From: Perkinsus chesapeaki ATCC PRA-425
Taxonomy: Eukaryota > Protista > Perkinsozoa
Reading direction: 5' to 3'
DNA: 64,000 nt
Assembly (NCBI GenBank): GCA_013115145.1
Contig: JAAPAO010000007.1
Location: 102,479 to 166,478, forward strand
The notes under the pieces are model-generated. The model made no database searches, was not told the origin of the DNA, and saw nothing but the letters and a program-made list of their open reading frames with translations. Shown here piece after piece: positions 3,321 to 49,300 of this stretch; position 1 is the first letter of the stretch, and every line of letters begins with the position of its first letter. The translations under genes were made by a program, and so were the position numbers.

Positions 3321-6300
3321 ATGCTATCAACGAAGTCACTCTTCACCTCGTCGAGTGCCGCCGCTCGCACTGTAGCGGCTGCCGCGTCCGCCTCTCGGAT
3401 GCGAGCATTTGCCAGCAGCACTGTTAACCACTCATCATCGGAGGGTTATACGGAACTGGTAGAACCTGCATGGAAACGGAAAGGAGCCAAGGTAAGCAAA
3501 CTGTTAAGTGGTTATTCTTGTATCGTAACACTTTTGCTACTCAGGGTTTAAAGCAGTTCCCACAGAAGCAGCTCCCCTATGACGGTTGCACTGCAGCCGC
3601 CTATGTGGCATATGCTTGGTCGGAGCAAGCAATGGTAAGCAATAGAAATCAAGTCTCCTGTTGATGACTTCGACTTCAGATTTATCCGATCACGCCCGCC
3701 ACGCCAATGGGAGATGTTATGGCTAATTGGGCCGGTCAAGGTCGAAAGAATCTTTTCGGCAGCGTATCTAAGGTTACTCAAATGCAATCTGAGGGTGGCG
3801 CTGCTGGTGCCGTCCATGGTGTCCTCGATGTTGGTGCTCTTGGTACTACATTCACCTCCTCGCAAGGACTACTTTTGATGATCCCCAATATGTACATAAT
3901 TGCCGGGGCTCTCAACCCTTGTGTTTTCCACGTTGCCGCACGTGCCATCTCGAAGCATGCATTATGTATCTTTGGTGACCACACCGATGTCATGGGTACT
4001 CGACAGACCGGTTGGGCCCAGCTATCCGGCCATAGTGTGCAGGCCTCTATGGATATGGCATTGGTGGCTCATATTGCTACATTGAAGAGCTCTGTTCCCT
4101 TCGTTAACTTTTTTGATGGCTTCCGTACTTCACATGAGATCAACAAGATCAACATCATACCGTATGAGGCCATGGAGCAGCTTGTGCCGTGGACCGAGCT
4201 GGCAGCCTACCGTGCCCGAGGCTTGAATCCTAACAGACCCCATTCGCGTGGTCTAGGCCAGTTCGCTGACACATTTTTCCAGAACTCGGAGGCCGTCAAC
4301 AAGTACTATGACAACACCCCTGGCATTGTGCAGTCGGTTATGAACGATGTTGCCCACGTCACCGGCCGCCACTATAAAAACTTCTTCTACTACGGCCACC
4401 CTCAAGCTGAGTATGTCACTGTCATCATGGGCTCCGGCAGCTCTACTGTAGAGGAGACTGTAAACTACATGAGTGCTCGTGGAGAGAAGGTTGGCCTTAT
4501 CCGTGTCCATCTGTACAGGCCGTGGGACGCGGACTCCTTCCTGAGTGCCTTACCCCACTCGGTTAAGCGTCTTGCTGTCCTTGATCGCACCAAGGAGCAG
4601 ACTGCCATTGGTGAACCACTGTTCTTAGATGTTGCAGCTACACTGCAGTCTGTTGGCAGCACTATGAAGGTGGTGGGTGGTCGTTATGGTCTCGGATCCA
4701 AGGAGTTCACTCCAGCCATGGCTGAAGCTGTCTTTGACAACCTAAAGCAGTCCAGGCCAGTTGAGAACTTCTCCGTCGGTATCGAGGACGACATCACTCA
4801 TCGGTCTATTAAGGTTGGCCCAGAGCCGGATGTTTCCGCCCCGGGTACCAGACAGTGCTTGTTCTGGGGCATGGGATCGGATGGTACAGTATCTGCCAAT
4901 AAGAGTGCAATCAAGCTCATTGCCGACAACACCGACCAGTACGTCCAGGCCTACTTCGCCTATGATTCCAAGAAGTCCGGCGGTTGCACCATCTCCCATC
5001 TTCGTTTCGGCCCGGAGAAGATAGAGTCCCCTTACGCCATCATGAACGCCGACTATATCGCCGTGTCCCAGCGAACTTGGCCACACAAGTTTCCGAGGGT
5101 CATCGTTGAGACCCTGAAGCCCGGCGGTATTGCTGTCTTCAACTCTGCTTCCAAGACGGCCGAGGATTTCCTCGCTGAAATGCCTCAGCCAGTTATCAAC
5201 CAACTCGGTGAGAAGAAGGCTCACATCTACACCATCGATGCCTCTAAGGTGGCTCGGGACAACGGCTTAGGTCGCCATACCAACAACGTCCTGGCTGCTG
5301 TATTTTTTAAATTGGCTGATATTATCCCCTACGAGAGCGCTGAGAGGTTGCTGAAGGATGCAATGAAGAAGGCTTACTCGGCGAAGGGTGATGATCTTGT
5401 ACAGAGGAACTTTAAGGGTGTCGATGCGGCTATTGCTAATTTGGTCGAGATACAGTACGACCCGCAAGTCTTCAGTACCTACTCTAAGCCCGAGGATGTC
5501 GATCCTACTAGGCCCGCCTTCTGTACTGATCTCATGGATAAGCTCAATGCTTTAGAGGGCAACAATCTGCCCGTATCTTCCTTCGACCCTCGTGGTCACT
5601 ACCCACCAGCCACAACCCAGTATGAGAAGCGTGGTGTGGCTCTGACTATCCCTATAGTGGATATGGATAAGTGTACTCAGTGTAACAAATGCTCGGCTAT
5701 CTGCCCTCATGCCGCTATTCGCCCCTTCCTCATCTCACAACTCGAGGCTGATGTCGCCCCCAAGGCCTTTGACATGCGAATGGCCAAGGGTGGCAATGAC
5801 GTCGCTGGTATGATGTACCGTATCCAGGTTGCCCCTGAGGACTGTACTGGTTGCGAGGCCTGCTCCTGGGCATGCCCGGACAACGCCCTGACTATGACAC
5901 CGTTGGAGGATGTTGTAGAGGTGCAGCGTCCCAATTGGTCATTTGCCATGAGTATCCCCAACCGTGGCTATATGGTGGACCGCCACACCCTCAAGGGTTC
6001 ACAGTTCCAGCAACCTATGCTTGAATTCTCGGGTGCCTGTGAGGGCTGTGGTGAGACTCCTTATGCCAAGCTCGTCACGCAGCTCTTCGGTGAGAGGATG
6101 GTGGTTGCTAATGCCTCTGGTTGCTCCTCCGTCTGGGCTGGCACTGCTGCCTTCAATCCTTTGGCGGTCAACAGTAAGGGCCAGGGCCCTGCCTGGGGTA
6201 GGTCCCTTTTCGAAGATGCAGCTGAGTACGGTCTTGGTATGGCTAGAGCTGTTCAAGAGCGCCGTCTGAATCTGAAGGAGAAGGTTCAAGAGCTGGTCGA

Positions 6301-8926
6301 TGATGAGGAGTACAAGGTCTTGCTGAGCCCTGAACTTAACAACGCCTGTCACGAATGGTTGGAGAAGTACAATGACTCCAAGATCTGCCAGGAGCTTGCT
6401 GATGACATTCCCTCCATGCTCGAGGCTACTTCCGGCCTCCGCCATGTCCCTTTGGTCCAGGAGATCCTATCTATGAAGGACCTCTTCCCTAAGATATCGC
6501 AATGGGTGTGGGGAGGTGATGGCTGGGCTTATGATATCGGCTTCGGTGGCCTGGACCATGTCCTTGCTTCGCAGACCGATCTCAATGTTCTGGTCATGGA
6601 TACCGAGGGTTACTCCAACACTGGTGGTCAAGTGTCCAAGTCTACCAACTTGGGTGCTGTGCAGAAGTTCGCTCCCACTGGCTATCGTCGTGCCAAGAAG
6701 GACCTCGGTGCCATCGCCATAGCCTACGGTGACGTCTACGTTGCCTCGATCGCCATCGGTGCCAACTACGCACAATCGGTGAAGGCTCTTGTCGAGGCTG
6801 AGGCCTTCCCCGGTCCCTCGCTGGTCCTGTGCTACTCTCCTTGCATCGAGCATAAGATTCTCTATCCTCGTGGTTTGTCCCGTCTGGCTGAGGAAATGAA
6901 GAAGGCTGTCGACTCGGGTTATTGGACCCTCTACAGATACAACCCAGCTCTGACCCCTCACGGCCAGAACCCCTTCACTCTGGACTCTAAGCACTTATCT
7001 ATTGATGTGGGCCACTTCACCAAGCTCGAGAACCGTTTCGAGATTCTCAAGCGTACTCATCCCGAGGTGGCCGAGCAGCTCAAGACAAGCCTTCAGAAAT
7101 GGACACAGGAACGTCTTGAGAACTTCAAGTGGATGGAGAAGCGTGGCGCCCCCTCTGAGGAGGCCGCTGGTCCTGCGCTCGACGTCCTCGTTGGTTCCGA
7201 CACCGGCACCACTACAGAGTTAGCCAACCGCTTCGCCAATCTATGTCGGTCTAGGCAGTTCAACGTTGCTGTCCATGAGCTCGACGAGATCACTCCGGAG
7301 TCTCTGCGTGCCATGAGCAACGTGGTTGTGCTGTGCTCTACAGCTGGTGAGGGTGACTTCCCCAACAACGCCCATGCTTTCTGGGAAGGACTGTCAGATC
7401 CCGAACTTGAGGAGGATTTCCTTTCCTCTACCAAGTTCTCTGTATTCGGTCTCGGTGACACCGGCTACAAGCACTTCAATGCCGCCGCTAAGAACATCGA
7501 GCAGCGTATGCTTGAGCTTGGTGCTGTGAAGTCTCAGGACATCGGCCTCGGTGATGACAAGGATGAGGACAAGTACGAGACTGCCTTCGAGTCTTGGCTA
7601 CCCGACTTCTGGAAAATCCAGAACGCCCCTGAGTCGCCTGATGAGCATGAGATCCCAGAGCCTATTGTGGAGTTGGAGGTCGTCGGCAAGGAGTTGGCCT
7701 GCAAGTACCAGAGAGTGCATCCCCCGAAGACCAAGACCATCACTCTCACCAAGAATGAGCGTATCACTTCGCCCGATTACAACCGTATCATTCGTCATCT
7801 CATCTTTGACGTCCGTGGTGTCGACTTCTCTTACCTTCTTGGAGATGCTCTTACTATCTATCCAGACAACGACCCCGCCTTGGTGGAGGACTTCTTGGAT
7901 TGGTACAGGGTTGATCAGAGCCAGTGGTATCACGTCCGTGGCACTAAAGACCTGGACGCTCGCCGTGCCGCGAGCTATCGTCACCCTATGACAGCCAGGC
8001 AGATCTTTGGTGAAGTTGTGGATATTACTGGTAGACCTAATAAGTTCTTCTACAAGCAGCTGGCCAAGTTCGCTGTCGACGAGGATGAGCGTAAGGCACT
8101 CGAGACCATCGTGGCCGACACCCCCGAAGGCCATGCCGCTTACAGCGCCTTGTCTACCGAGTGTGTGAACTACATTGATGTCCTCAAGAAGTTCCCCAGC
8201 GCCCATCCACCACTGGAGCATCTTATGTCCCTTGTGCCGTGCATAAAGCCAAGGCTCTACTCCATTGCTTCCTCTCAGCGTTATGTCAATGACAAGGTTG
8301 AGCTTGTTATTGTTGTGAACGACTGGAAGACCCCCAGTGGTGCTCTGAAGCGCGGTCTCTGTACCAACTACGTCGACAGGCTGGCCACTGATGGACAGGA
8401 GGATCTCACTCACAAGGTGGTCGTGTCGGTTACGCCTGGCACCTTCAACTTGCCTCCAACTTTAATGGAGCCCTACATTATGACTGGTCTTGGTACTGGT
8501 TTGGCGCCCTTCCGAGCCTTCATTCAAGAGAGAGCTTTCTTCAAGAGACTTGGTTATGAGACTGGTCCCATGTGGTTGTTCTATGGCTGCCGATATCGCG
8601 CTAAGGACTACATCTTCGGTGACGAATTGGAGAAGTATGCCGAGGAAGGCGTCATCACCCATTTGAAGCCCGCTTTCTCACGCGATCAGAAGGAGAAGGT
8701 CTATGTTCAGCACAAGATGCTTGAGAGTAAAAATGAGTTGTACGAGGATCTCATCACCAAGGGTGGCTACTTCTATCTTTGCGGTCAAGCTGGTCAGTTG
8801 GAGATTGACGTCAGGAATGCTATTCTTACGGCAATCAAGGAGGGTGGAAACATGTCCGCTGAGGAGGCCCAGAAGGTATTTAGTAAGTTTGACGAAGAGG
8901 GCCGATACTGCCTCGAGCTCTACTAA
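3321..8926 (+). CDS. PNO: Pyruvate:NADP+ oxidoreductase (PFO fused to NADPH-cytochrome P450 reductase domain) with N-terminal mitochondrial presequence; about 1835 aa
   Basis: Exons 3321-3491, 3545-3634 and 3680-8926, joined by GT-AG introns. PFO motifs YPITP, SEGGAAG, GGRYGLGSKEF, two 4Fe-4S motifs (CTQCNKCSAICP, CTGCEACSWACP) and TPP-binding GGDGWAYDIG. These are followed by flavodoxin (GSDTGTT, FGLGD), FAD (RLYSIAS) and NADPH (GTGLAPFRAF, FYGCR, FYLCG) motifs. The N-terminus is Ser/Ala/Arg-rich with no acidic residues. Confidence 0.97.
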
Positions 8927-10878: not shown

Positions 10879-13800
10879 CTAATCGGTAGGAGTTGCCGCC
10901 GAAGCTGTCGCTTTGTCGAGCTCGGCTTTCCTCTCAGCCTCTCGAAGCCGCAGCGGAATGTAGTCTTTCATATCTTCCTCCTCCACCAAGTCGCCAACAT
11001 CAAGCTGGAGGATGTCGCAACTGCCAAGACGAGAACTATCGATCCGCCGAACGTCGCCTTCGGTAGTAGCCTACTGTCTCGAGCCGAGTAGCTCTGCCAT
11101 GGAGGGTCTGGTCCTGCCAAAGTCACCATGGACGAATTCCTTGATATACATTCCGGCACTGCACGCCAGGGACACCTGAGGGGAGTTCAGTAGGCCATGA
11201 TGGCTGAGCCTATGGTGCCCACTTTGAGGTAATGTGGATTTATCATCTCACAGGTGATGCTATGCATTATTTTAGTCCGCATGGCGTTGGCTCGTCTGTG
11301 CATGACTCGAAGAGGAGTCCTCTGATGGATCTCCAACTCCTTCATAGCGTTCACCCTCTCCACGACTTCCTCGGTAACCGGGTCCTCACACCACACGACA
11401 CACACGTACCTGAGGTTGTTAATAATAATAACAACATCTAAGGTATAGACCCTGAGAGAATTGAAGACTGATAATAAAAGACCCCATAGTAGTAATGATA
11501 TAATAAATGTAATGGTATAATAGTAACAAATGTAGCTCCCTCCATTCCCTTCCCCTGAGCATCGCCTACACTTTAGTGTGTCTCTCACTAGACCAGCCTA
11601 GCCATTCCATAACATGCTTATCAGCTGGATGGATGAACATAACTTCAAAGGCATCGGTCTTGGCAGCAAGAGAAGGCCAGTCCACCTTGTGGTGCGGGAG
11701 GAGCAGGTTCCTGTGGGCATCTGGTATCTAATGGACGATCTGGACCCCCTATGGAACGATCTGTATGGATCCACCCTACCTCTACAGCAAATGGTCGGCC
11801 GTTGCCAAGCATTCTAACATCCACGTCCTCTCGACCAGCACTGCAGAAGCTACACCGTTTCCAGTCAGCACCGAGGGCCTCGCAAATGGGCTCTGACCGG
11901 AACGCGTGGATCCCGCCGCGGAGAAGGTACAGATCGAGTACGAACTTTGGGGGTGTGTTCACAAAATGGGTTTTATATCGGCGGTAACTAATTTGGCTGC
12001 AGATATCCCTGCTGGAGGGGATCCAGCTTCATCGATGTGCTCTGATGACTCAATTTTAATAATATAGCACCGATGATCATGTTGCTACTTCAAAACAATA
12101 GTTCTACGATCTTTATGTCCTTACAGCCTCGTGGTAAGCAAATGGATATTATTACTAAGGGCAATCTCCGAGGCCGACGTCTCGCACCGGCTACGTGGCT
12201 TGGCACCATCCCGGACAACCCATGGTGTCTGGGATATCTTCCTGCTGAACTTCCTATACCTCCCAAAGAGGTAAATACTGTCACGATTGATAACAGCCTC
12301 TAGAGTTGGTCTAAACTGAGCTGTATTAGGATACGCCTTCATGCACTTCCTCAAGTCATCCACACCTACATTCGACATCATAACCCTCCGCCCTCCCCTC
12401 CACCCTACCAAGTAGCATTTCCAGGCGCTCGGAGCTCTGCCCTCTCATAGCCTTTATAATAGTGTTGGCCGATGGCAGGTCCTCTGGCTCAGAGCCCTCT
12501 GGTGATGATTCCGTGGAGGGCTGTTGAGAGATGATGCCTGCACTACGGTGACAGTGCCTACTACCTCCTCAGTGGAGGACGATTCTCCTCTATTTTTATC
12601 TCTTCGCCATCGGCCCTTCCCTTTGCCACCTTTCCGTGCAAACTTCCTATCATCTTTCCATTCTAGTGGGGAGGACAATCATAAGACATAATCATCACAG
12701 CAGTCCCTTCCTACTCGAAGGTGGTCTGATCCTCTGTTCACTGGCCAACGCTGAGCACTCTAACCTGTCCGCCTCCGGGGAGTTGACCTATAACAACCGA
12801 GCATCCCCGACCAACGATGCTTTACTATAAAAGTCCGATCTAGAGACTGACGTTCGAGTCCCGTGTATGAGGTCGAGGTAACGGTTACCTGGTGACCCCT
12901 AGCTACCCAAGCTAGTAATAACCGTCCCTATACACCCTCACGGAAACGACGCTGAATGATGGAATAAGCTTCCGAAGGCACTACAGTCTACTTTCCGTGG
13001 AAGAGTGAATATTTGTTACTACTTCTAGAGTAACTCTAAAGTAGGCATCTGCCACTGGTGGTGATGCAGCCAAGGTCTCCTGTGTCACACCAGGGGTCAT
13101 CTTACGCATCTTGTTGATCAGCTCGGGCAGCAACACCCACCGCAATACCTCCCGGACCTCTGGAACCTGATAACACTGCTACGTATCTGGTACGCTCTTC
13201 CAGAGGGATACAAATGAGTATAGCTTTTAAGGAGAAGGACACCAAGTGATGGCCTAAGAAGCGTCCCCGGTTTTGTATTGAAAATGCATCTTGCACAAAC
13301 CGTCACGATTCCCTAATGTATACTCTTTTCGTTGGGAACGCTGGTATGTACAAGGTAGATCACCGAGCACCAGGAAGCACCGAGCCCTCAAGATGGCACC
13401 GTAGTAGCACTCAGCTGCCTCCGCCGACCACCGCCCGCTATAGTACCTCCTCCACTTGATCCTTCTCGTATAGGACCTTCTCAATAAACCCACGGACTAC
13501 CAGCGCTGGTGGCAGACGAGTCGATAGGACCAGATCGTAGGTGTCCTCGAAACTGAGCAATACTTTACACCCACGGGAAGGCCACCTTCAATTTACCCTG
13601 ATGAGTTAATAGCCGCGATGATGTCCTCCATTACAGGGTTCTCATGCTTAATCCGACATGGGTCCTCTAGAAGCCCGAAACAGCCACCACAGAGATACTC
13701 CGGCTCCGGTCTGAAGCCATGGCAATGTCCTCTTCCCTCTCTGGAAGGCCCGCTGCTCCGGTTGTACTACCTGCTATCAGTTGGTGGGCCAACCCATTGC

Positions 13801-14483: not shown

Positions 14484-17395
14484 TCACTGTGGTGATGCTG
14501 CTGCTGGGATACTGGCATCACTTCTCGGTAATGATGTTACATCAACCTAGAAAGGATAACTAATGATGGAGTATACAATAGTTGCCTTACAGTTATAGGG
14601 CTCCCAGCTCCAGTGCTTGATGCTGCTGCTGCTGCTGATGCCTGCTTGCCTGTTGTTGTCGTTGCTGACTGCTTACCACTATTAATCTCTATAACGCCAT
14701 TAGAGGTAGAATGGGAGGAGGAGGAGCATGCTTCATCCTGGGGAAAAGGTACATGAACTGATGAGATGGACGGGCTTGATGGACTTGTAGAGGAGGCGGA
14801 GGAGGAGGATAGGCTAGCTATCAAGGACGCCAAGGTTGAAGGGTCTCCAACTACGGACAAAATGTAACCCAGCAAGCAGCTTCAACCTTACCTTCACTGC
14901 GATGACCAGGCATACTGTGGCTGGCATTGCCGGTAGCCACCACCGGGCGACGAGGGACATTCGGGGACCTATGACATGGTGAAGTGGGGAAGGGACAGGA
15001 GACGGGAAGGGTACTCTGAGATGGATGAGGAGGATACTGCCGAGTTGAGAGGGTTCCACCAACTCTGAAAAGGCAAAGTCACGCTGCTGCCGGTGCTGGG
15101 ACAAATAACAAGGGGGAACTTACAGAGTTGCTGGGAGTGAAGGTGGCTGCAGTGGCGCTGAGATGGCTGCTACTACTGCTGGCCCCGGAGGTCCCAGTAG
15201 TACCAAGATCTGAGGAAGAAGCGGTACAACCACCTGCTACTGGAGGTTTTACCAAACTGGCCGGAAAAACCGCCGAAGGAGCCGAAGTCAACACTGTCGC
15301 TGCTATTGCTAGCATTGGTGCTGCCAGTGTGAGGGCCAGATCCCGCCACGGACACGTTGGTGCCTGCAAAGATACTCACCATGGCAGCACTGAAATGACT
15401 GATGTGATGAGAAGGAGAGGAAGAGATGGTTACAATCCACTGATTTGTTAAAGAAGAAGCACCCATGGGAAAAAACCTTAATAGATTTGCGAAATTCCAG
15501 TCTCCCAATAGCAAAGCGAAGAGAGGGTCCTTACGTACCTGTAGTAGGGGCGTTCCGAGGTGATGTGGCAAGGGGGCCAAAGGGGCTGGCAGCCTCAGCT
15601 CGACCAAAGCCATAGGAGCGCATCAACTGCTCGGCAAGTTTGGCCAAGGAGTCACTGAAATTGAACACGCTCGGTTACCAGGTATGAAGGAGAATGCTTA
15701 CTCGGGGGCAAGTGAAGTGGTAGCAGGAGGGTCAGCAGCAGCAGGGACGGCATCCCAGGACGAAGTGAACCCACCTCGTGAGTAATCAACCTGCGCAGCA
15801 GGTGAGGTGGTGAGGTGGCGGCAAGGACCACTGGACTCACGCTAGGGGTAAAAGAGGGAGCATCAACACTTAGGTTGCTAGCGGCACTGCTGCCTCGTTC
15901 GGCCAGGACGGAGCCTGTTGTGAAGTTGTCAAACGAGGACAGGGATGGCGCCAAATCTTCCGAGTGCGCCGATGACGACAATGGAAGGGCTTGTGAGAAG
16001 GCATTGGGCATGATGGACTCGAACCCAGGAGGAGGGGTATTAACCTCAGACTCACTAAGCTCCTCTTGGGTGGGAACTAAGACACCACAAACAACGACTA
16101 TGCGGCTGCGGCGGGAGAGGAAGAAGGCTGCCTCCTACAAAACTGTGTATTGCGTCCATCGTAGCCTCCGCCATGCCTTGAGGCCGCTGGGCCATTGGAC
16201 GTCACTTGGGTCTGCTGCTGCTGGTGCTGCTGCTGTGTTGGTACACTGGATGGCATTCGGTTGCTACCACCCGCAACACCTGATGCCCGTCTAGTCTTGA
16301 GGAATGCTACTGAAGTCGTACTACCCATCTTGGATGCCACAGAGGCCGCTGTTGCCGCGACCTGCGGATCGGTCGGAATACTGGCGCCATTTTGAAAACC
16401 GCAATAGACCATGTAGTTCTCCATCAACTGCTCAGCGAGCTGGACGAACTGACTGTGCGAGCGAGACCTGCGGGAGCAAAGATATCTTTGCGCACTCGGA
16501 AGATTTTCACTTGATAGCGTTATATATCTGCCCCTTGAGATTGTATTCTTCTAAAAATGCATCGGGAGCATGTCGCCTAATGATGCGAAGGAGGTCTCGC
16601 TTGCTTAGATTAGCATAATCCGGCCCAAACTCTGCCAGGACCTATCACATGCCAATGGCTGGTGAAGGACAAAAGCATACAGCCTACCATCTCTGTTGTC
16701 GAGTACTGTGTAGGAGGGTACTGCTCGGCCAGTGGAGGGACCTCCCCTCGAACTTGACCGCTCACAGCCCCTGCACTGTGGTAATGGTTGCGTAGAGATT
16801 GCCTAGTCGGCCTGGATGGCGCCGGAGCACCTTGAGTGTAGGCTAAGGCTGTTGGTGACAAAGATGCTGATGAGGTGGGGGTGCTGCGGCTTGGAGCAGC
16901 TGCCACAGGATATGTGGCTGATGATGATGATGACGACGATAATAATAATAACTCTCCCAAAGCCGGTGAGGAGGCGGTTGATGCTAACTGAGGGGCAACC
17001 ATCGGATCTGACAAGGACATAGAAGGCATCCTAAGCCCAAGCGTACCTTGCAGGCTTCGACCTCTGATATGTGGGGGCATCCCTCCCTTTACGGTCCCTC
17101 TGGGCGGCATGCCTCCAGTCCACTGCGTCGGAGCTGCTGGATTAGCTGCTCTCATGCCTTCACTGGGCTGGTGGCCTTGCATGTGATTCGCACTTCCTTG
17201 ATGATGCCGTGGTCCTGAGGGGTTGTTAGTCGTCCAACCATTTGCTGTTGTTGCTGTTGATTGGGCGGCAAAGACAGAGTTGGCCAGGCCCTCTGTGCCT
17301 CCTAGATAGGCCTGGAAGGGATCGGAGGTGTTCCGATCGGCAGAAGAGGAAGAGGAGCCGATGCGAGGATTATGGGACGACGATGGCACCGCCAT
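14484..17395 (-). CDS. Low-complexity Ser/Ala/Pro-rich protein with a BTHB (FKBP25/HECTD1-type) domain and two PAM2-like motifs; ends approximate
   Basis: Several GT-AG-joined minus-strand exons. Spliced LSKRDLLRIIRRHAPDAFLEEYNLKGQIYNAIKSRSHSQFVQLAEQL (16420-16620), SNLSVDAPSFTP (15844-15879) and SHLSATAATFTP (15133-15168). Confidence 0.7.
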
Positions 17396-17581
17396 AATGG
17401 GTAATAACAAAAGCCCTTCCATACCGCACTTCCCTCAAATCATGCCCCCCACAACCCCCTGTTATCCACTTCCGTCACAAGCCAACACCACAAATGGTAG
17501 TGGAAACGACAGTCATCATATCATCAAAAGTAGCAGCCCTTATGGCCTGAGTCTGGGCTACTGGTAATATAACAGTGCTGC

Positions 17582-19561
<1,980 letters not shown>

Positions 19562-46350: not shown

Positions 46351-49300
46351 ATGGACGGAGGAGGAGGATCTCAAGCAGCAGCCTCTAAGGCCCATCGAAA
46401 GCCTACCTCAGGTAGTATCCGGGAAACACGGCTCCGCGCCGTTGATGGTTACGGGAAGGAAGTTTTACCTAAGGAGTGTGGTGTCAGGTGGTAAGGCAAA
46501 GAAGAAGCGCGAGAAAGCTAACGTAGATCGACATAACCCAAAAGCCTTCACCTTCTCGGGCGGCATACACAGCGTTCAACGAAGAGTACAGAGAGGCCTT
46601 GATGTGAAGGCCAAAAGAGAAAAGATTGAAAAAATGGACAAACGCCCAGAAGGCGTTGAGGCTCCACCGTAGGGCTTTTTATGGCAGCATCATATTAAAC
46701 ACGCTGATTTTAGATATGTAGTGGTAGTGCAGGGGCCTCCAGGATGCGGTAAAACGACTTTAATAAGAAGTCTCGTCAAGCACTACACCAAGACAACGCT
46801 CGGTGCCACCATAGAGGGTAGTAGACCGTACTCGGTTCGGGAGGGACCAGCGTAATGATTGCAGGACCCATCACTGTGGTATCCGGCCGCAACCGTCGCT
46901 TAACCTTCATAGAGTGCCCGGCTAACGATATGCGAGCCATGATAGATCTGGCGAAGGTTGCTGACCTGGTAGGCTCCGCTGTCATACACAGGCCTTGAGC
47001 TGCTGCCTGAGTAGGTGCTCTTGATGGTGGATGCTGTCAGAGGATTTGAAATGGAAACGTTCGAGTTCATCAATATTATGCAGGTAATGCTTGTTGCCTT
47101 GTATTGCCTACTGTCCTCACCGGCTCACAGGTCCACGGTTTTCCCAGAGTTCTCGGCATCCTTACGCACTTGGATGGCTTCAAGGAGTCTAAAAGCAAGC
47201 CTTTCCATCAACGGGTAGCCTTGATAGGGGTATTGCAGGCATTCGCAAGATGAAGAAACGGTATAAAGCGAGGTTCTGGGCGGAGCTGTACGACGGGGCT
47301 AAAATGTTCTATCTAAGCGGTATCCAGTATAGTGGGACGCGCTACAACAAAACAGAGGTCACTAACTTGGCCAGGTAGGAATCTTTCCCTTCCACTGGCA
47401 TAGGAGGTTCGTCTAGGTTCATCGCCATCCAGAAATTTGCCCCTCTGTCCTGGCGGCAAGAGCACTCCTACATGGTGGCCCATCGGTGGGAGGACCGGAC
47501 CCTGGTCCCCAATAGTGATACAAGAACCCTTGCTCTATACGGCTACGTCTCGGGCTGTCGGTTACGTACCGAAGGCCAGGCTTTCCATATTGCGGGAGTT
47601 GGAGACTTCCCAGTGGCATCGGCAACGTCAGCTTTGGACCCTTGCCCACCTCCGACCAACCAGAACCCTAAGATGAAGGGATTGGCTTTGAGGACGTTAA
47701 GCGACAAGCAAAGGAATCTTTATGCACCTTATTGCGAGCATCAACATATTACGGTGGACTCCGAGGCTATGTATATTAATACTAGGGAGGCTGATGAGAG
47801 CTTTACTAGGAAAGAGGAAGAAGGTAGTAGGGAGGGAAGGTGTCTCATTACATTTATATATTATTGTTACGACGCTCCCTCATTACATTTATATATTATT
47901 GTTACGACGCTCCCTCATTACATTTATATATTATTGTTACGACGCTCCCTCAANNNNNNNNNNNNNNNNNNNNNNNNNNNNNNNNNNNNNNNNNNNNNNN
48001 NNNNNNNNNNNNNNNNNNNNNNNNNNNNNNNNNNNNNNNNNNNNNNNNNTCATTACATTTATATATTATTTTTATGCCTCCACTTCCACATTACATTTAT
48101 ATATTATTTTTATGCCTCCACTGCCTCATTACATTTATATACTATTTTTATGCCTCCACTTCCTCATTACTTTTATATTTTATTGTTACGACGCTCTCTC
48201 CAGGTACCGAGTCTACCGATGATGAAAGCCTCCCCGGAAGCGAGCCTTCGAGCGATGAGGAGGAGGATGATGAGATGGACCCCAGCGAGGCTGTTAAAAT
48301 GGTTCGAGAGCTCCAGGATGTCCACATTGACCTCAAAGATAGAGATGCACCTCTGCCACTATTAGCTGGTGGGGCCGAGGTACCACCGAGTAGGAGGCTT
48401 GCTGAGGCAGAGGAGGAAGAAGATGATGATGAAGGAGGGGAGCAGTGGAGCGATGAGGTAGTTGTGGGAAGGATGTGGCCGGGTTACATCGAGGTTCATA
48501 CCAACTTTTTCTCAAATCGTGGGTGTGTCAGGAAAAGGACGCTGATGACGATGAAGAGGATGATGATGAGTATGTGAATCCATTCCTGGAGGTGTCGGAT
48601 AAGCTAGATTCCGTAGCTAAAGGGTTCGAGGATGATGATGAGGATGAAGAAGAAGGCTCGACTGATGCTAGGACAGCTGCTCAGTGGGATGCTTTAGTGT
48701 ATGGTCAACATATAGACACTAATAGGGAGAATAAGGTAGTAGTAGGGGGGTGCGTGGAGAAGCGGAATGAGGGCTGGCGAGGTATCTCCTCTGTTTATAG
48801 GAAGTTGCAAGGATATTTGAGACTCCTCCCTCAATGCGAATCAACGTGGGATTCCCCCTGGGGCTGGGTGGCCTTGAGTCCAAGGTTCGTTTTGCTCTTT
48901 ACCCTAATCTTAGCACTTCTGCTGCTTGTAGACCTTATATAGGCACAGCTTCTCGGTGCTCGCGAGGATGTAGAGATATAAAAGGTCCGTGTGGACCAGC
49001 GGGCTTAATATTGACATGCTACAAGACGGGAGATGATTTGTGTCAGAAAGCGAAGGCTCCTGAGGTGGGCAGCGGTAAGGTGCAGCTATTTGAGGACGAT
49101 GAGGATGAGGAGGAGGACGATGGGGAGGTTGATGACGGTATCGACACATCCAAGCCTAGGATGCTGCCCTTTGGTGCCACAACCGAGGAGGAGGGGGAGG
49201 GGTTGGAGTCGGAGGTATACATCAGGCAGCTAAGATGCAGAAGGTTCTTTGTGGCTAAGAACATCACCAAGGAACTGGAGGGGGAGGTTAAGGTACGGTG

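What the first reader, a model, noticed from the sequence alone, without database searches (positions are those of the whole stretch)
15133..16700. Stand-alone BTHB domain plus two PAM2-like motifs in a disordered protein
Seen: after removing two short introns (the second is 16468-16510) the protein reads YSTTEMVLAEFGPDYANLSKRDLLRIIRRHAPDAFLEEYNLKGQIYNAIKSRSHSQFVQLAEQL. This aligns well, from memory, with the Basic Tilted Helix Bundle of FKBP25 (LPKKDII..H..D.FL.EHKL.G) and HECTD1. Downstream in-frame exons contain SNLSVDAPSFTP and SHLSATAATFTP, matching the PAM2 pattern L-[NS]-x-x-A-x-x-F-x-P. Established: BTHB binds nucleic acid and is described mainly with FKBP or HECT domains; PAM2 binds the MLLE domain of poly(A)-binding protein. 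Inference: a new architecture, a PABP-recruited RNA-binding or granule protein with no FKBP or HECT domain.
Basis: partly seen in the sequence, partly recalled or inferred. Interest (0 to 1): 0.7.

Follow-up and report, generated by a model that had tools for sequence, protein, structure and literature searches.

The report
Perkinsus BTHB protein with PAM2 motifs
This oyster-parasite (Perkinsus) gene encodes a mostly disordered protein with one small helical domain of the FKBP25/HECTD1 "BTHB" family and two conserved peptides that look like docking sites for poly(A)-binding protein. The combination has not been described, but the protein is already in the databases and nothing about its function has been tested.

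Summary
The finding lies in a 13-exon minus-strand gene (CDS 17395..14484). Its product is letter for letter the database protein P0013: 736 aa, Perkinsus chesapeaki FOL47_009737, auto-named in UniRef "FKBP3 basic tilted helix bundle domain-containing protein".

- **BTHB:** the call is supported by sequence. Pfam PF18410 scores 32.6 bits (cut-off 25.6). The three best PDB sequence hits are the three solved BTHB entries. Five helices are predicted. Fold comparison puts 2kfv and 2lc3 at ranks 1 and 2, but not significantly (E 1.3, TM about 0.4).
- **PAM2:** both motifs are in frame. They are the only two pattern matches in all six frames of the 64 kb. Their key positions are invariant in P. olseni inside poorly conserved disordered sequence. 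Both are below Pfam's PAM2 cut-off.
- **Other domains:** no FKBP or HECT domain was found.
- **Other conserved motifs:** PPPGF (a possible GYF ligand), a repeated LAEQLM helix and SWWNP.
- **Relatives:** found only in Perkinsus.
- **Not tested:** RNA binding, PABP binding and expression.

Verdict: a real gene and an undescribed combination of known modules, of moderate interest.

The parts
14484..17395 (-). Whole CDS: 13 exons, 736 codons plus stop. Equals P0013 (P. chesapeaki FOL47_009737). Exons: 16688-17395, 16511-16641, 16325-16467, 16139-16279, 15841-16076, 15702-15790, 15539-15654, 15253-15363, 15124-15209, 15015-15064, 14892-14968, 14591-14850, 14484-14546.
   Evidence: Exact spliced mapping of P0013 onto the window with GT..AG introns of 41-62 nt plus one of 175 nt. 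P0013 was retrieved.
16266..16750 (-). Conserved folded block, P0013 residues 216-332. It is 93% identical to P. olseni, against 33% for the N-terminal disordered region. It spans introns 1-3.
   Evidence: Alignment A1 and per-region identity. Exon 2 has 25 synonymous-only against 3 amino-acid-changing codon differences versus P. olseni; exon 3 has 20 against 4.
16404..16699 (-). BTHB-like five-helix domain, residues about 233-301. The Pfam BTHB match covers residues 247-296 (window 16419-16611). It is interrupted by introns 16642-16687 and 16468-16510.
   Evidence: Pfam PF18410 32.6 bits, E 7.6e-8, cut-off 25.6; exon 2 alone 26.1 bits. PDB phmmer top hits 2kfv and 2mph (FKBP3) and 2lc3 (HECTD1). 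AlphaFold2 predicts five helices. Foldseek ranks 2kfv and 2lc3 first and second at E 1.3.
16015..16038 (-). TPPPGFES, residues 388-395: a conserved PPGF-type proline motif and candidate GYF-domain ligand.
   Evidence: Invariant in four Perkinsus sequences. Of 8 codons, 3 differ synonymously and none changes the amino acid versus P. olseni. PPGF is described as a GYF-domain ligand in PMC7910438. The link to this protein is inference only.
15841..15879 (-). PAM2-like motif 1, SNLSVDAPSFTPS (residues 441-453). It is preceded by a conserved Ser-rich stretch (residues 417-440).
   Evidence: It fits the refined PAM2 definition at positions 3, 4, 5, 7, 10 and 12 (PMC2854688). Pfam PAM2 scores 18.5 bits, E 0.0016, below the cut-off of 20. 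Key residues are invariant in P. olseni. Of 13 codons, 6 differ synonymously and 3 change the amino acid, all at non-critical positions.
15600..15654 (-). Conserved helix-like motif DDSLAKLAEQLMRSYGFGR (residues 483-501). It repeats the LAEQLM..Y of the last BTHB helix (residues 289-298).
   Evidence: 84% identical to P. olseni, with flanks at 22-24%. The repeat is seen directly in P0013. Function unknown.
15130..15168 (-). PAM2-like motif 2, SHLSATAATFTPS (residues 573-585).
   Evidence: L3, S4, A7, F10 and P12 are present, but Ala sits at position 5 (for the definition). There is no Pfam PAM2 hit in P0013; the P. olseni copy scores 12.4 bits, E 0.14. Key residues are invariant. Of 13 codons, 6 differ synonymously and 2 change the amino acid, at positions 8 and 9.
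15050..15064 (-). SWWNP (residues 588-592): a conserved Trp motif directly after PAM2-like motif 2, at the start of exon 10.
   Evidence: Invariant in the alignment. Residues 586-592 are 86% identical. Function unknown.
17524..19561 (-). Upstream neighbour on the same strand: methionine aminopeptidase 2. Its stop lies about 130 nt before this gene's ATG. It is not part of the protein.
   Evidence: tblastn of the P. olseni proteins; ORF ending at 17524. The separate MetAP2 model P0007 and the separate P0012 model show two genes.

Best explanation
This is a genuine, selectively maintained Perkinsus gene for a 736-aa protein that is mostly disordered and rich in Ser, Ala, Pro, Gly and Thr. Its one folded module is a five-helix domain of the BTHB family (as in FKBP25/FKBP3 and HECTD1), extended by a conserved C-terminal helix. 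Its C-terminal half carries a string of conserved short linear motifs: PPPGF, PAM2-like 1, an LAEQLM helix, PAM2-like 2 and SWWNP. The most likely mode of action is inferred, not shown. It would be an mRNP adaptor: the two PAM2-type peptides dock on the MLLE domain of cytoplasmic poly(A)-binding protein, and the BTHB module contacts structured or double-stranded RNA, or another partner. The PPPGF motif may recruit a GYF-domain repressor. In logic it would resemble other RNA-binding-domain-plus-PAM2 proteins such as LARP4 or ataxin-2, with BTHB as the binding module. Shown: the gene structure, the domain and motif content, the conservation and the purifying selection. Inferred: every binding event and the cellular role. 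The confidence given is for the whole statement including the mechanism; for the anatomy alone it would be about 0.9.
For: - Exact 13-exon mapping of database protein P0013 onto the window.
- BTHB profile match above Pfam's curated cut-off: 32.6 bits on the domain, 28.7 on the full protein, 26.1 on exon 2 alone.
- The PDB sequence search returns the three BTHB entries as its top three hits: 2kfv E 5.9e-4, 2mph E 2.1e-3, 2lc3 E 0.18.
- In that alignment, FKBP25's dsRNA-contact residues K22, K23 and K52 (PMC5714180) correspond to K250, R251 and K280. K48 corresponds to Y276.
- Five helices are predicted at pLDDT about 70-88. Foldseek ranks 2kfv and 2lc3 first and second among 350,542 chains.
- Both PAM2-like motifs are in frame, are the only pattern matches in the window, and have an expected chance of two in this composition below 1/20,000.
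- Motif 1 satisfies every position of the refined PAM2 definition.
- Conservation islands against P. olseni: folded block 93%, PAM2-1 77%, PAM2-2 85%, PPPGF 79%, against 15-39% for the intervening disordered segments.
- Synonymous changes far exceed amino-acid changes in exons 2-3, and the motifs' key positions are kept despite codon drift.
- The gene order MetAP2, this gene, Pus10 is conserved in P. olseni.
- No other Pfam domain is found in the 736 aa.
Against: - Both PAM2 motifs are below Pfam's PAM2 gathering score of 20: 18.5 bits for motif 1 and no hit for motif 2.
- Motif 2 has Ala at position 5. A Pro-to-Ala change there lowered Paip2 affinity five-fold.
- The structural match to BTHB is not significant: Foldseek E 1.3, TM 0.37-0.43; VIA Z 3.6-3.7, with unrelated helical bundles scoring as high or higher. 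The models rest on a 4-sequence alignment.
- The domain as a whole is near neutral: pI 6.0, 8 K+R against 9 D+E. One of the four FKBP25 RNA-contact lysines is Tyr.
- A diverged Logan fragment has Glu at the K250 position.
- HECTD1's BTHB has no established RNA-binding role.
- No Perkinsus PABP or MLLE domain was examined here.
Confidence: 0.5

Rival explanations
1. The protein is a motif scaffold in which the BTHB-like domain is a protein-protein or self-association module, not an RNA binder. It would still sit on PABP through PAM2 and perhaps on a GYF protein through PPPGF, but bring no RNA contact of its own.
For: The domain is near neutral overall (pI 6.0). K48 of FKBP25 is replaced by Tyr. 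A diverged fragment has Glu at the K22-equivalent position. The LAEQLM helix of the domain is repeated in the disordered tail, which could mean an intramolecular or partner-mimicking contact. RNA binding has been shown only for FKBP25's BTHB.
Against: Over the 51 residues aligned to FKBP25 the Perkinsus domain carries 8 K+R against 6 D+E, at least as basic as the human stretch with 7 against 6 (counted from the alignment). Three of four RNA-contact positions stay basic.
Confidence: 0.25
2. The protein is a nuclear FKBP25-like factor without the isomerase, working in pre-ribosome or chromatin or dsRNA-associated processes. The PAM2-like peptides would then be unrelated to PABP: either ligands of another partner or simply conserved phospho-regulated segments.
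For: FKBP25's BTHB works in the nucleus with pre-60S and nucleolin and with dsRNA. The PAM2 motifs do not reach Pfam's cut-off. The N-terminal 215 residues are strongly basic, pI 11.1.
Against: There are two copies of the full L-S-x-x-A-x-x-F-x-P spacing, each with key positions invariant across species in otherwise fast-evolving sequence. This is what a functional PAM2 would look like. First-reader notes, unverified, list several other PAM2-bearing RNA-binding proteins in this genome.
Confidence: 0.15
3. It is a gene-model artefact or non-functional locus: the exons are not expressed or not joined as annotated.
For: No transcript evidence could be obtained. One P. olseni model fuses the gene to MetAP2 (P0010), which shows that the annotation here is unstable. 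One intron (16280-16324) is in frame, so its retention cannot be excluded.
Against: Independent annotations in two species give the same junctions. Synonymous differences far exceed amino-acid changes in the domain exons, 45 against 7 codons over exons 2-3. The frame is kept through 12 introns. Synteny is conserved.
Confidence: 0.03

Closest known systems
FKBP25 / FKBP3 N-terminal BTHB domain (PDB 2KFV, 2MPH; Pfam PF18410)
   Same: It is the best sequence match in the PDB (E 5.9e-4 over 50 residues) and the match lies above Pfam's cut-off. The same five-helix order is predicted. Basic residues are kept at the positions of K22, K23 and K52, which contact dsRNA in FKBP25.
   Different: There is no FKBP_C isomerase domain. 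The domain is embedded in the middle of a 736-aa disordered protein rather than at the N terminus of a 224-aa enzyme. K48 is Tyr and the domain is near neutral overall (pI 6.0). It has an extra conserved C-terminal helix (residues about 314-327). Identity in the structural alignments is only about 23-26%.
HECTD1 BTHB domain (PDB 2LC3)
   Same: It is the third PDB sequence hit (E 0.18) over the same 50 residues and the Foldseek rank 2. As here, the domain sits inside a large multi-part protein.
   Different: No HECT, ankyrin or MIB/SUN domains are present. A weak ankyrin-like hit to my first exon-3 reading fell largely on sequence that is an intron in the database model, so it is spurious.
PAM2-bearing RNA-binding adaptors of PABP (LARP4/4B, ataxin-2, and multi-PAM2 proteins such as Ustilago Upa1/Upa2)
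   Same: The layout is a folded nucleic-acid-binding-type domain plus PAM2-type peptides in long disordered regions, here with more than one PAM2 per protein. Motif 1 fits the refined definition at every position.
   Different: The folded module is BTHB rather than La/RRM, LSm or FYVE. There is no sequence homology outside the motifs. The motifs carry Ser at position 4 (the less common choice) and score below Pfam's cut-off. Binding is untested.
GYF-ligand-bearing mRNA regulators (TNRC6/GW182, plant URT1)
   Same: A conserved PPGF-type motif lies in a disordered region of a putative mRNA-associated protein. TNRC6 also combines a PAM2 with a PPG-hydrophobic motif.
   Different: This is a resemblance of motif content only. 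No GYF protein of Perkinsus was examined, and there are no GW repeats or Ago-binding region.

Membership tests
BTHB domain family (Pfam PF18410) | Profile match at or above Pfam's curated gathering score (25.6 bits) | tested here: met
   32.6 bits (E 7.6e-8) for P0013:225-345, 28.7 bits for full P0013, and 26.1 bits for exon 2 alone. Profile positions 13-63 of 72 are matched.
BTHB domain family (Pfam PF18410) | Sequence similarity to the solved BTHB domains | tested here: met
   The top three of 177,635 distinct PDB sequences are 2kfv (E 5.9e-4), 2mph (E 2.1e-3) and 2lc3 (E 0.18), all over the same 50 residues.
BTHB domain family (Pfam PF18410) | Compact five-helix bundle with the BTHB topology | tested here: inconclusive
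   AlphaFold2 predicts five helices in the right order at pLDDT about 70-88, from a 4-sequence alignment. Foldseek ranks 2kfv and 2lc3 first and second, but at E 1.3 and TM 0.37-0.43. VIA Z is 3.6-3.7, no better than unrelated bundles.
BTHB domain family (Pfam PF18410) | Basic surface, with the dsRNA-contact lysines K22, K23, K48 and K52 of FKBP25 | tested here: inconclusive
   K250, R251 and K280 are retained and Y276 replaces K48. The aligned core has 8 K+R against 6 D+E, but the whole domain has pI 6.0.
BTHB domain family (Pfam PF18410) | Binding of double-stranded RNA or DNA | not testable with these tools
   Needs EMSA, NMR or fluorescence polarisation with purified residues 216-332.
FKBP25-type immunophilins | C-terminal FKBP_C peptidyl-prolyl isomerase domain | tested here: not met
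   No FKBP_C hit in P0013 or P0012 even at E up to 10.
HECTD1-type E3 ligases | HECT catalytic domain and ankyrin repeats | tested here: not met
   No HECT or Ank Pfam hit. The weak ankyrin-like PDB hit fell largely on intron-encoded sequence.
PAM2 motif (Pfam PF07145; refined definition of Kozlov et al., PMC2854688) | Hydrophobic residue (Leu) at 3, Asn/Ser at 4, Pro/Val(/Thr) at 5, Ala at 7, Phe at 10, Pro at 12 | tested here: met
   Motif 1 has L3 S4 V5 A7 F10 P12, so all are met. Motif 2 has L3 S4 A5 A7 F10 P12, so all are met except position 5.
PAM2 motif (Pfam PF07145; refined definition of Kozlov et al., PMC2854688) | Pfam gathering score (20 bits) | tested here: not met
   Motif 1 scores 18.5 bits isolated and 16.6 in the full protein. 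Motif 2 has no hit in P0013 and 12.4 bits in P. olseni P0012.
PAM2 motif (Pfam PF07145; refined definition of Kozlov et al., PMC2854688) | Lies in disordered sequence and is conserved as an island among orthologues | tested here: met
   The composition is 18.6% Ser, 12.2% Ala and 9.1% Pro. The Atlas model of the whole protein has mean pLDDT 0.38. The motifs are 77-85% identical against 22-39% for their flanks, and key positions are invariant.
PAM2 motif (Pfam PF07145; refined definition of Kozlov et al., PMC2854688) | An MLLE-domain partner (PABP) exists in the organism and binds the peptide | not tested
   No Perkinsus PABP sequence was available by reference. There is only an unverified first-reader note of a PABC domain gene in this genome and the general presence of MLLE in alveolate PABP1 (Plasmodium, PMC5760745). 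Binding needs a pull-down or ITC.

The most novel reading that the evidence does not exclude
A Perkinsus-lineage invention in which a BTHB dsRNA-binding module is tethered by two PAM2 peptides to PABP, and by PPPGF to a GYF/4EHP-type repressor. The protein would then read double-stranded or highly structured regions of polyadenylated RNAs and couple them to poly(A)-dependent control. This would happen in a lineage that relies on post-transcriptional regulation and spliced-leader trans-splicing. In its dinoflagellate relatives eIF4G lacks the PABP-binding region (PMC6027434). It would be the first BTHB protein with a cytoplasmic mRNA role and the first functional context for BTHB outside FKBP25 and HECTD1.
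Probability: 0.15. Interest if true: 0.6.

Novelty: new variant of a known kind. Interest (0 to 1): 0.38.

Why it matters
BTHB is a small and little-studied fold. A nucleic-acid-binding role has been shown only for human FKBP25, and HECTD1's copy has no assigned function. A protein that carries BTHB without an enzyme domain but with PABP-type and GYF-type docking peptides would give the fold an independent functional context in cytoplasmic mRNA control. It would also give a simple, testable system: one 110-residue domain and two 13-residue peptides. For Perkinsus, a parasite of oysters and clams that is related to dinoflagellates, it would add a lineage-specific node to the PABP interaction network, in organisms thought to regulate genes mainly after transcription. 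If the motifs do not bind PABP, what remains is an ordinary lineage-restricted disordered protein with an automatically annotated domain.

Tried and rejected
- **Fungal origin.** I first took the short introns to mean a fungus. The database hits show Perkinsus.
- **Single long exon 3 (16140-16466).** My first model was wrong. The database model removes an in-frame 45-nt intron (16280-16324), and P. olseni agrees. The weak ankyrin-like hit to that exon fell largely on the intron and is rejected.
- **ESM Atlas searches.** Searches by features and by structure, and the 'atlas' fold search, gave only unrelated bacterial helical proteins.
- **Repeat proteins P0003, P0005 and P0006** from the 43-aa phmmer search are leucine-rich or low-complexity repeats, not relatives.
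- **MetAP2-BTHB fusion (P0010, P. olseni).** Rejected as an annotation merge. Separate MetAP2 (P0007) and separate full-length models (P0012, P0013) exist, and the window has an in-frame stop at 17435-17437 upstream of the ATG.
- **Logan contig L001.** It carries only the exon-1 end and exon 2 (77% identical), with no downstream exons or PAM2 pattern. It is a fragment or pseudogene copy and is of no use for testing motif conservation.
- **Hand-joined model.** I did not search with one. Searches went exon by exon by reference, and then used the database protein P0013 that the tools returned.
Full report
**What is there**

The finding lies on the minus strand, inside a multi-exon gene. I first searched exon by exon, by reference. 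Exon 2 (window 16513-16641, 43 codons) alone matched Pfam BTHB (PF18410) at 26.1 bits and E 8e-6, just above the curated cut-off of 25.6. The exon holding the first PAM2-like peptide gave a weak PAM2 hit (14.7 bits, cut-off 20). The second gave none.

An exhaustive phmmer search with exon 2 against 1.84 billion representatives found only three true relatives, all from Perkinsus. The other three hits were repeat proteins. A word-index search with the P. olseni orthologue then returned P0013, a 736-aa protein. NCBI lists it as 'hypothetical protein FOL47_009737 [Perkinsus chesapeaki]'. UniRef names it 'FKBP3 basic tilted helix bundle domain-containing protein'.

P0013 maps onto the window residue for residue, including the stop. 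It forms 13 exons on the minus strand, with the CDS running from 17395 to 14484. The introns are GT..AG, 41-62 nt long, plus one of 175 nt. So the window is P. chesapeaki DNA, or something identical over this gene, and the gene is already deposited.

I did not search with a hand-joined spliced sequence. Full-length analyses used the database protein P0013 that the tools returned.

**Check of the observation**

- Intron 2 is 16468-16510, exactly as stated. Intron 1 is 16642-16687.
- The two PAM2-like peptides are residues 441-453 (window 15841-15879) and 573-585 (15130-15168), both in frame.
- The pattern L-[NS]-x-x-A-x-x-F-x-P occurs exactly twice in all six reading frames of the 64-kb window, both times in this protein.
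- In 20,000 shuffles of P0013 it occurred at least once in 0.3% and at least twice in none.

**The BTHB domain**

Sequence evidence is good.
- On the isolated region P0013:225-345 the Pfam score rises to 32.6 bits (E 7.6e-8), covering profile positions 13-63 of 72.
- A phmmer search of all PDB sequences returns the three BTHB entries as its top three hits: FKBP3 2kfv (E 5.9e-4), FKBP3 2mph (E 2.1e-3) and HECTD1 2lc3 (E 0.18). All three align over the same 50 residues.
- In the 2mph alignment, three of FKBP25's dsRNA-contact residues (PMC5714180) stay basic: K22, K23 and K52 correspond to K250, R251 and K280. K48 corresponds to Y276.

Structural evidence is only suggestive.
- AlphaFold2, run on 4-sequence alignments, predicts five helices in the expected order at pLDDT about 70-88. 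A sixth conserved helix lies at residues about 314-327.
- With the trimmed model, Foldseek ranks 2kfv and 2lc3 first and second of 350,542 chains, but at E 1.3 and TM 0.37-0.43.
- VIA-align gives Z 3.6-3.7, no better than unrelated helical bundles.

I therefore treat family membership as met by profile and the fold test as inconclusive.

The domain as a whole is not basic: pI 6.0, with 8 K+R against 9 D+E. The 51 residues aligned to FKBP25 do carry 8 K+R against 6 D+E (counted).

No FKBP_C, HECT or any other Pfam domain is found in the 736 residues.

**The PAM2-like motifs**

The refined PAM2 definition is a hydrophobic residue (usually Leu) at position 3, Asn or less often Ser at 4, Pro/Val (occasionally Thr) at 5, invariant Ala at 7, invariant Phe at 10, and usually Pro at 12 (PMC2854688).
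- Motif 1 (S-N-L-S-V-D-A-P-S-F-T-P-S) satisfies every position.
- Motif 2 (S-H-L-S-A-T-A-A-T-F-T-P-S) satisfies all but position 5, which is Ala. A Pro-to-Ala change there cost Paip2 five-fold in affinity.
- Neither motif reaches Pfam's PAM2 cut-off. Motif 1 scores 18.5 bits and motif 2 gives no hit. The P. olseni copy of motif 2 scores 12.4 bits.

**Conservation**

Identity between P. chesapeaki and P. olseni is 48% overall and strongly patchy.

| Region (P0013 residues) | Identity |
|---|---|
| Folded block 216-332 | 93% |
| N-terminal disordered region 1-215 | 33% |
| Linkers | 15-39% |
| PPPGF segment 385-398 | 79% |
| Stretch 417-440 | 79% |
| PAM2-1 | 77% |
| Helix motif 483-501 | 84% |
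| Block 511-532 | 95% |
| PAM2-2 | 85% |
| SWWNP | 86% |

All key PAM2 positions are invariant in the four sequences.

At the codon level, against P. olseni locus L002:
- Exon 2 has 25 synonymous-only and 3 amino-acid-changing differences in 43 codons.
- Exon 3 has 20 and 4 in 47 codons.
- PAM2-1 has 6 synonymous and 3 changing codons. PAM2-2 has 6 and 2. All changes fall at positions that do not contact MLLE or are non-critical.

This is strong evidence that the frames are translated and that the peptides themselves are under selection.

The gene order MetAP2, this gene, Pus10 is the same in P. olseni.

**Relatives**

Three searches found only Perkinsus proteins: exhaustive phmmer with exon 2, the word index on the domain region, and the word index on the whole protein. 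They come from P. chesapeaki, P. olseni and a P. marinus fragment. A Logan contig also carries only the exon-1 end and exon 2.

These searches are weak for distant BTHB domains. The queries were short, or needed shared 5-residue words. Absence outside Perkinsus is therefore not established.

No paper in the library holds both 'BTHB' and 'PAM2'.

**Interpretation**

The anatomy is one small conserved fold in the middle of a long disordered chain, followed by at least five conserved short motifs. This is typical of an adaptor.

The best-supported reading is a PABP-tethered mRNP adaptor. Its BTHB module contacts structured RNA or a protein partner. The PPPGF motif is a candidate ligand for a GYF-domain repressor (PPGF and GYF: PMC7910438).

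Every binding step is inference. I could not examine a Perkinsus PABP. The only hints are:
- an unverified first-reader note of a PABC-domain gene in this genome;
- the presence of MLLE in Plasmodium PABP1.

First-reader notes also list four other PAM2-bearing loci on other DNA of this genome. They are unverified, and I use them only as leads.

**Rivals**

- The BTHB domain is a protein-interaction module with no RNA contact (0.25).
- The protein is a nuclear FKBP25-like factor and the PAM2-like peptides serve another partner (0.15).
- The locus is an annotation artefact (0.03). This is argued against by the selection pattern and by independent models in two species.

**Novelty and score**

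The gene, its product and the BTHB call are already in public databases through automatic annotation. The two PAM2-type motifs, the PPPGF motif, the repeated LAEQLM helix and the overall architecture are not described anywhere I could search.

It is a new combination of known modules, restricted as far as seen to Perkinsus, with no functional data.

Noticed in passing
window 17524-19561 (-): The methionine aminopeptidase 2 gene lies directly upstream on the same strand. Its stop is only about 130 nt before this gene's ATG. One P. olseni GenBank model (P0010, 1106 aa, 'Methionine aminopeptidase 2, partial') fuses the two genes. Separate models (P0007, P0012) indicate that this is an annotation merge.
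   Followed up: partly
window 16280-16324 (-): A 45-nt intron lies in frame with no stop. Its retention would insert 15 residues just after the conserved block. My first model read through it, and its translation produced a spurious ankyrin-like PDB hit.
   Followed up: partly
window 15364-15538 (-): One intron of 175 nt stands out among eleven of 41-62 nt. It was not examined for a repeat or introner-like element, although first-reader notes mention introner-like elements in this genome.
   Followed up: no
window 15600-15654 and 16419-16445 (-): The peptide LAEQLM..Y of the last BTHB helix recurs in the disordered tail (residues 486-497), with 12 identical bases (GAGCAGTTGATG) at the DNA level. 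Both copies are conserved in P. olseni. Whether this reflects internal duplication or convergence is unexplained.
   Followed up: partly
window 3707-8926 (+): An intronless 1739-aa ORF has PFOR domains (POR_N, PFOR_II, POR, EKR, 4Fe-4S) fused to flavodoxin, FAD-binding and NAD-binding domains. This is a pyruvate:NADP+ oxidoreductase-type fusion.
   Followed up: no
window 11187-12411 (-): ORFs downstream of the gene resemble a Pus10-type pseudouridine synthase. The syntenic P. olseni gene carries Pfam Pus10_C.
   Followed up: no
window 47472-48365 (+): An ORF has an AARP2CN (NUC121) domain, so it is part of a Bms1/Tsr1-type ribosome-biogenesis GTPase gene.
   Followed up: no
L001:1142-1446 (Logan SRR12548988): This contig carries a 77%-identical copy of exon 2 and the conserved end of exon 1. 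It has an in-frame stop upstream and no detectable downstream exons or PAM2 pattern. It is probably a pseudogene or partial paralogue in another Perkinsus-like genome. It has Glu where K250 sits.
   Followed up: partly
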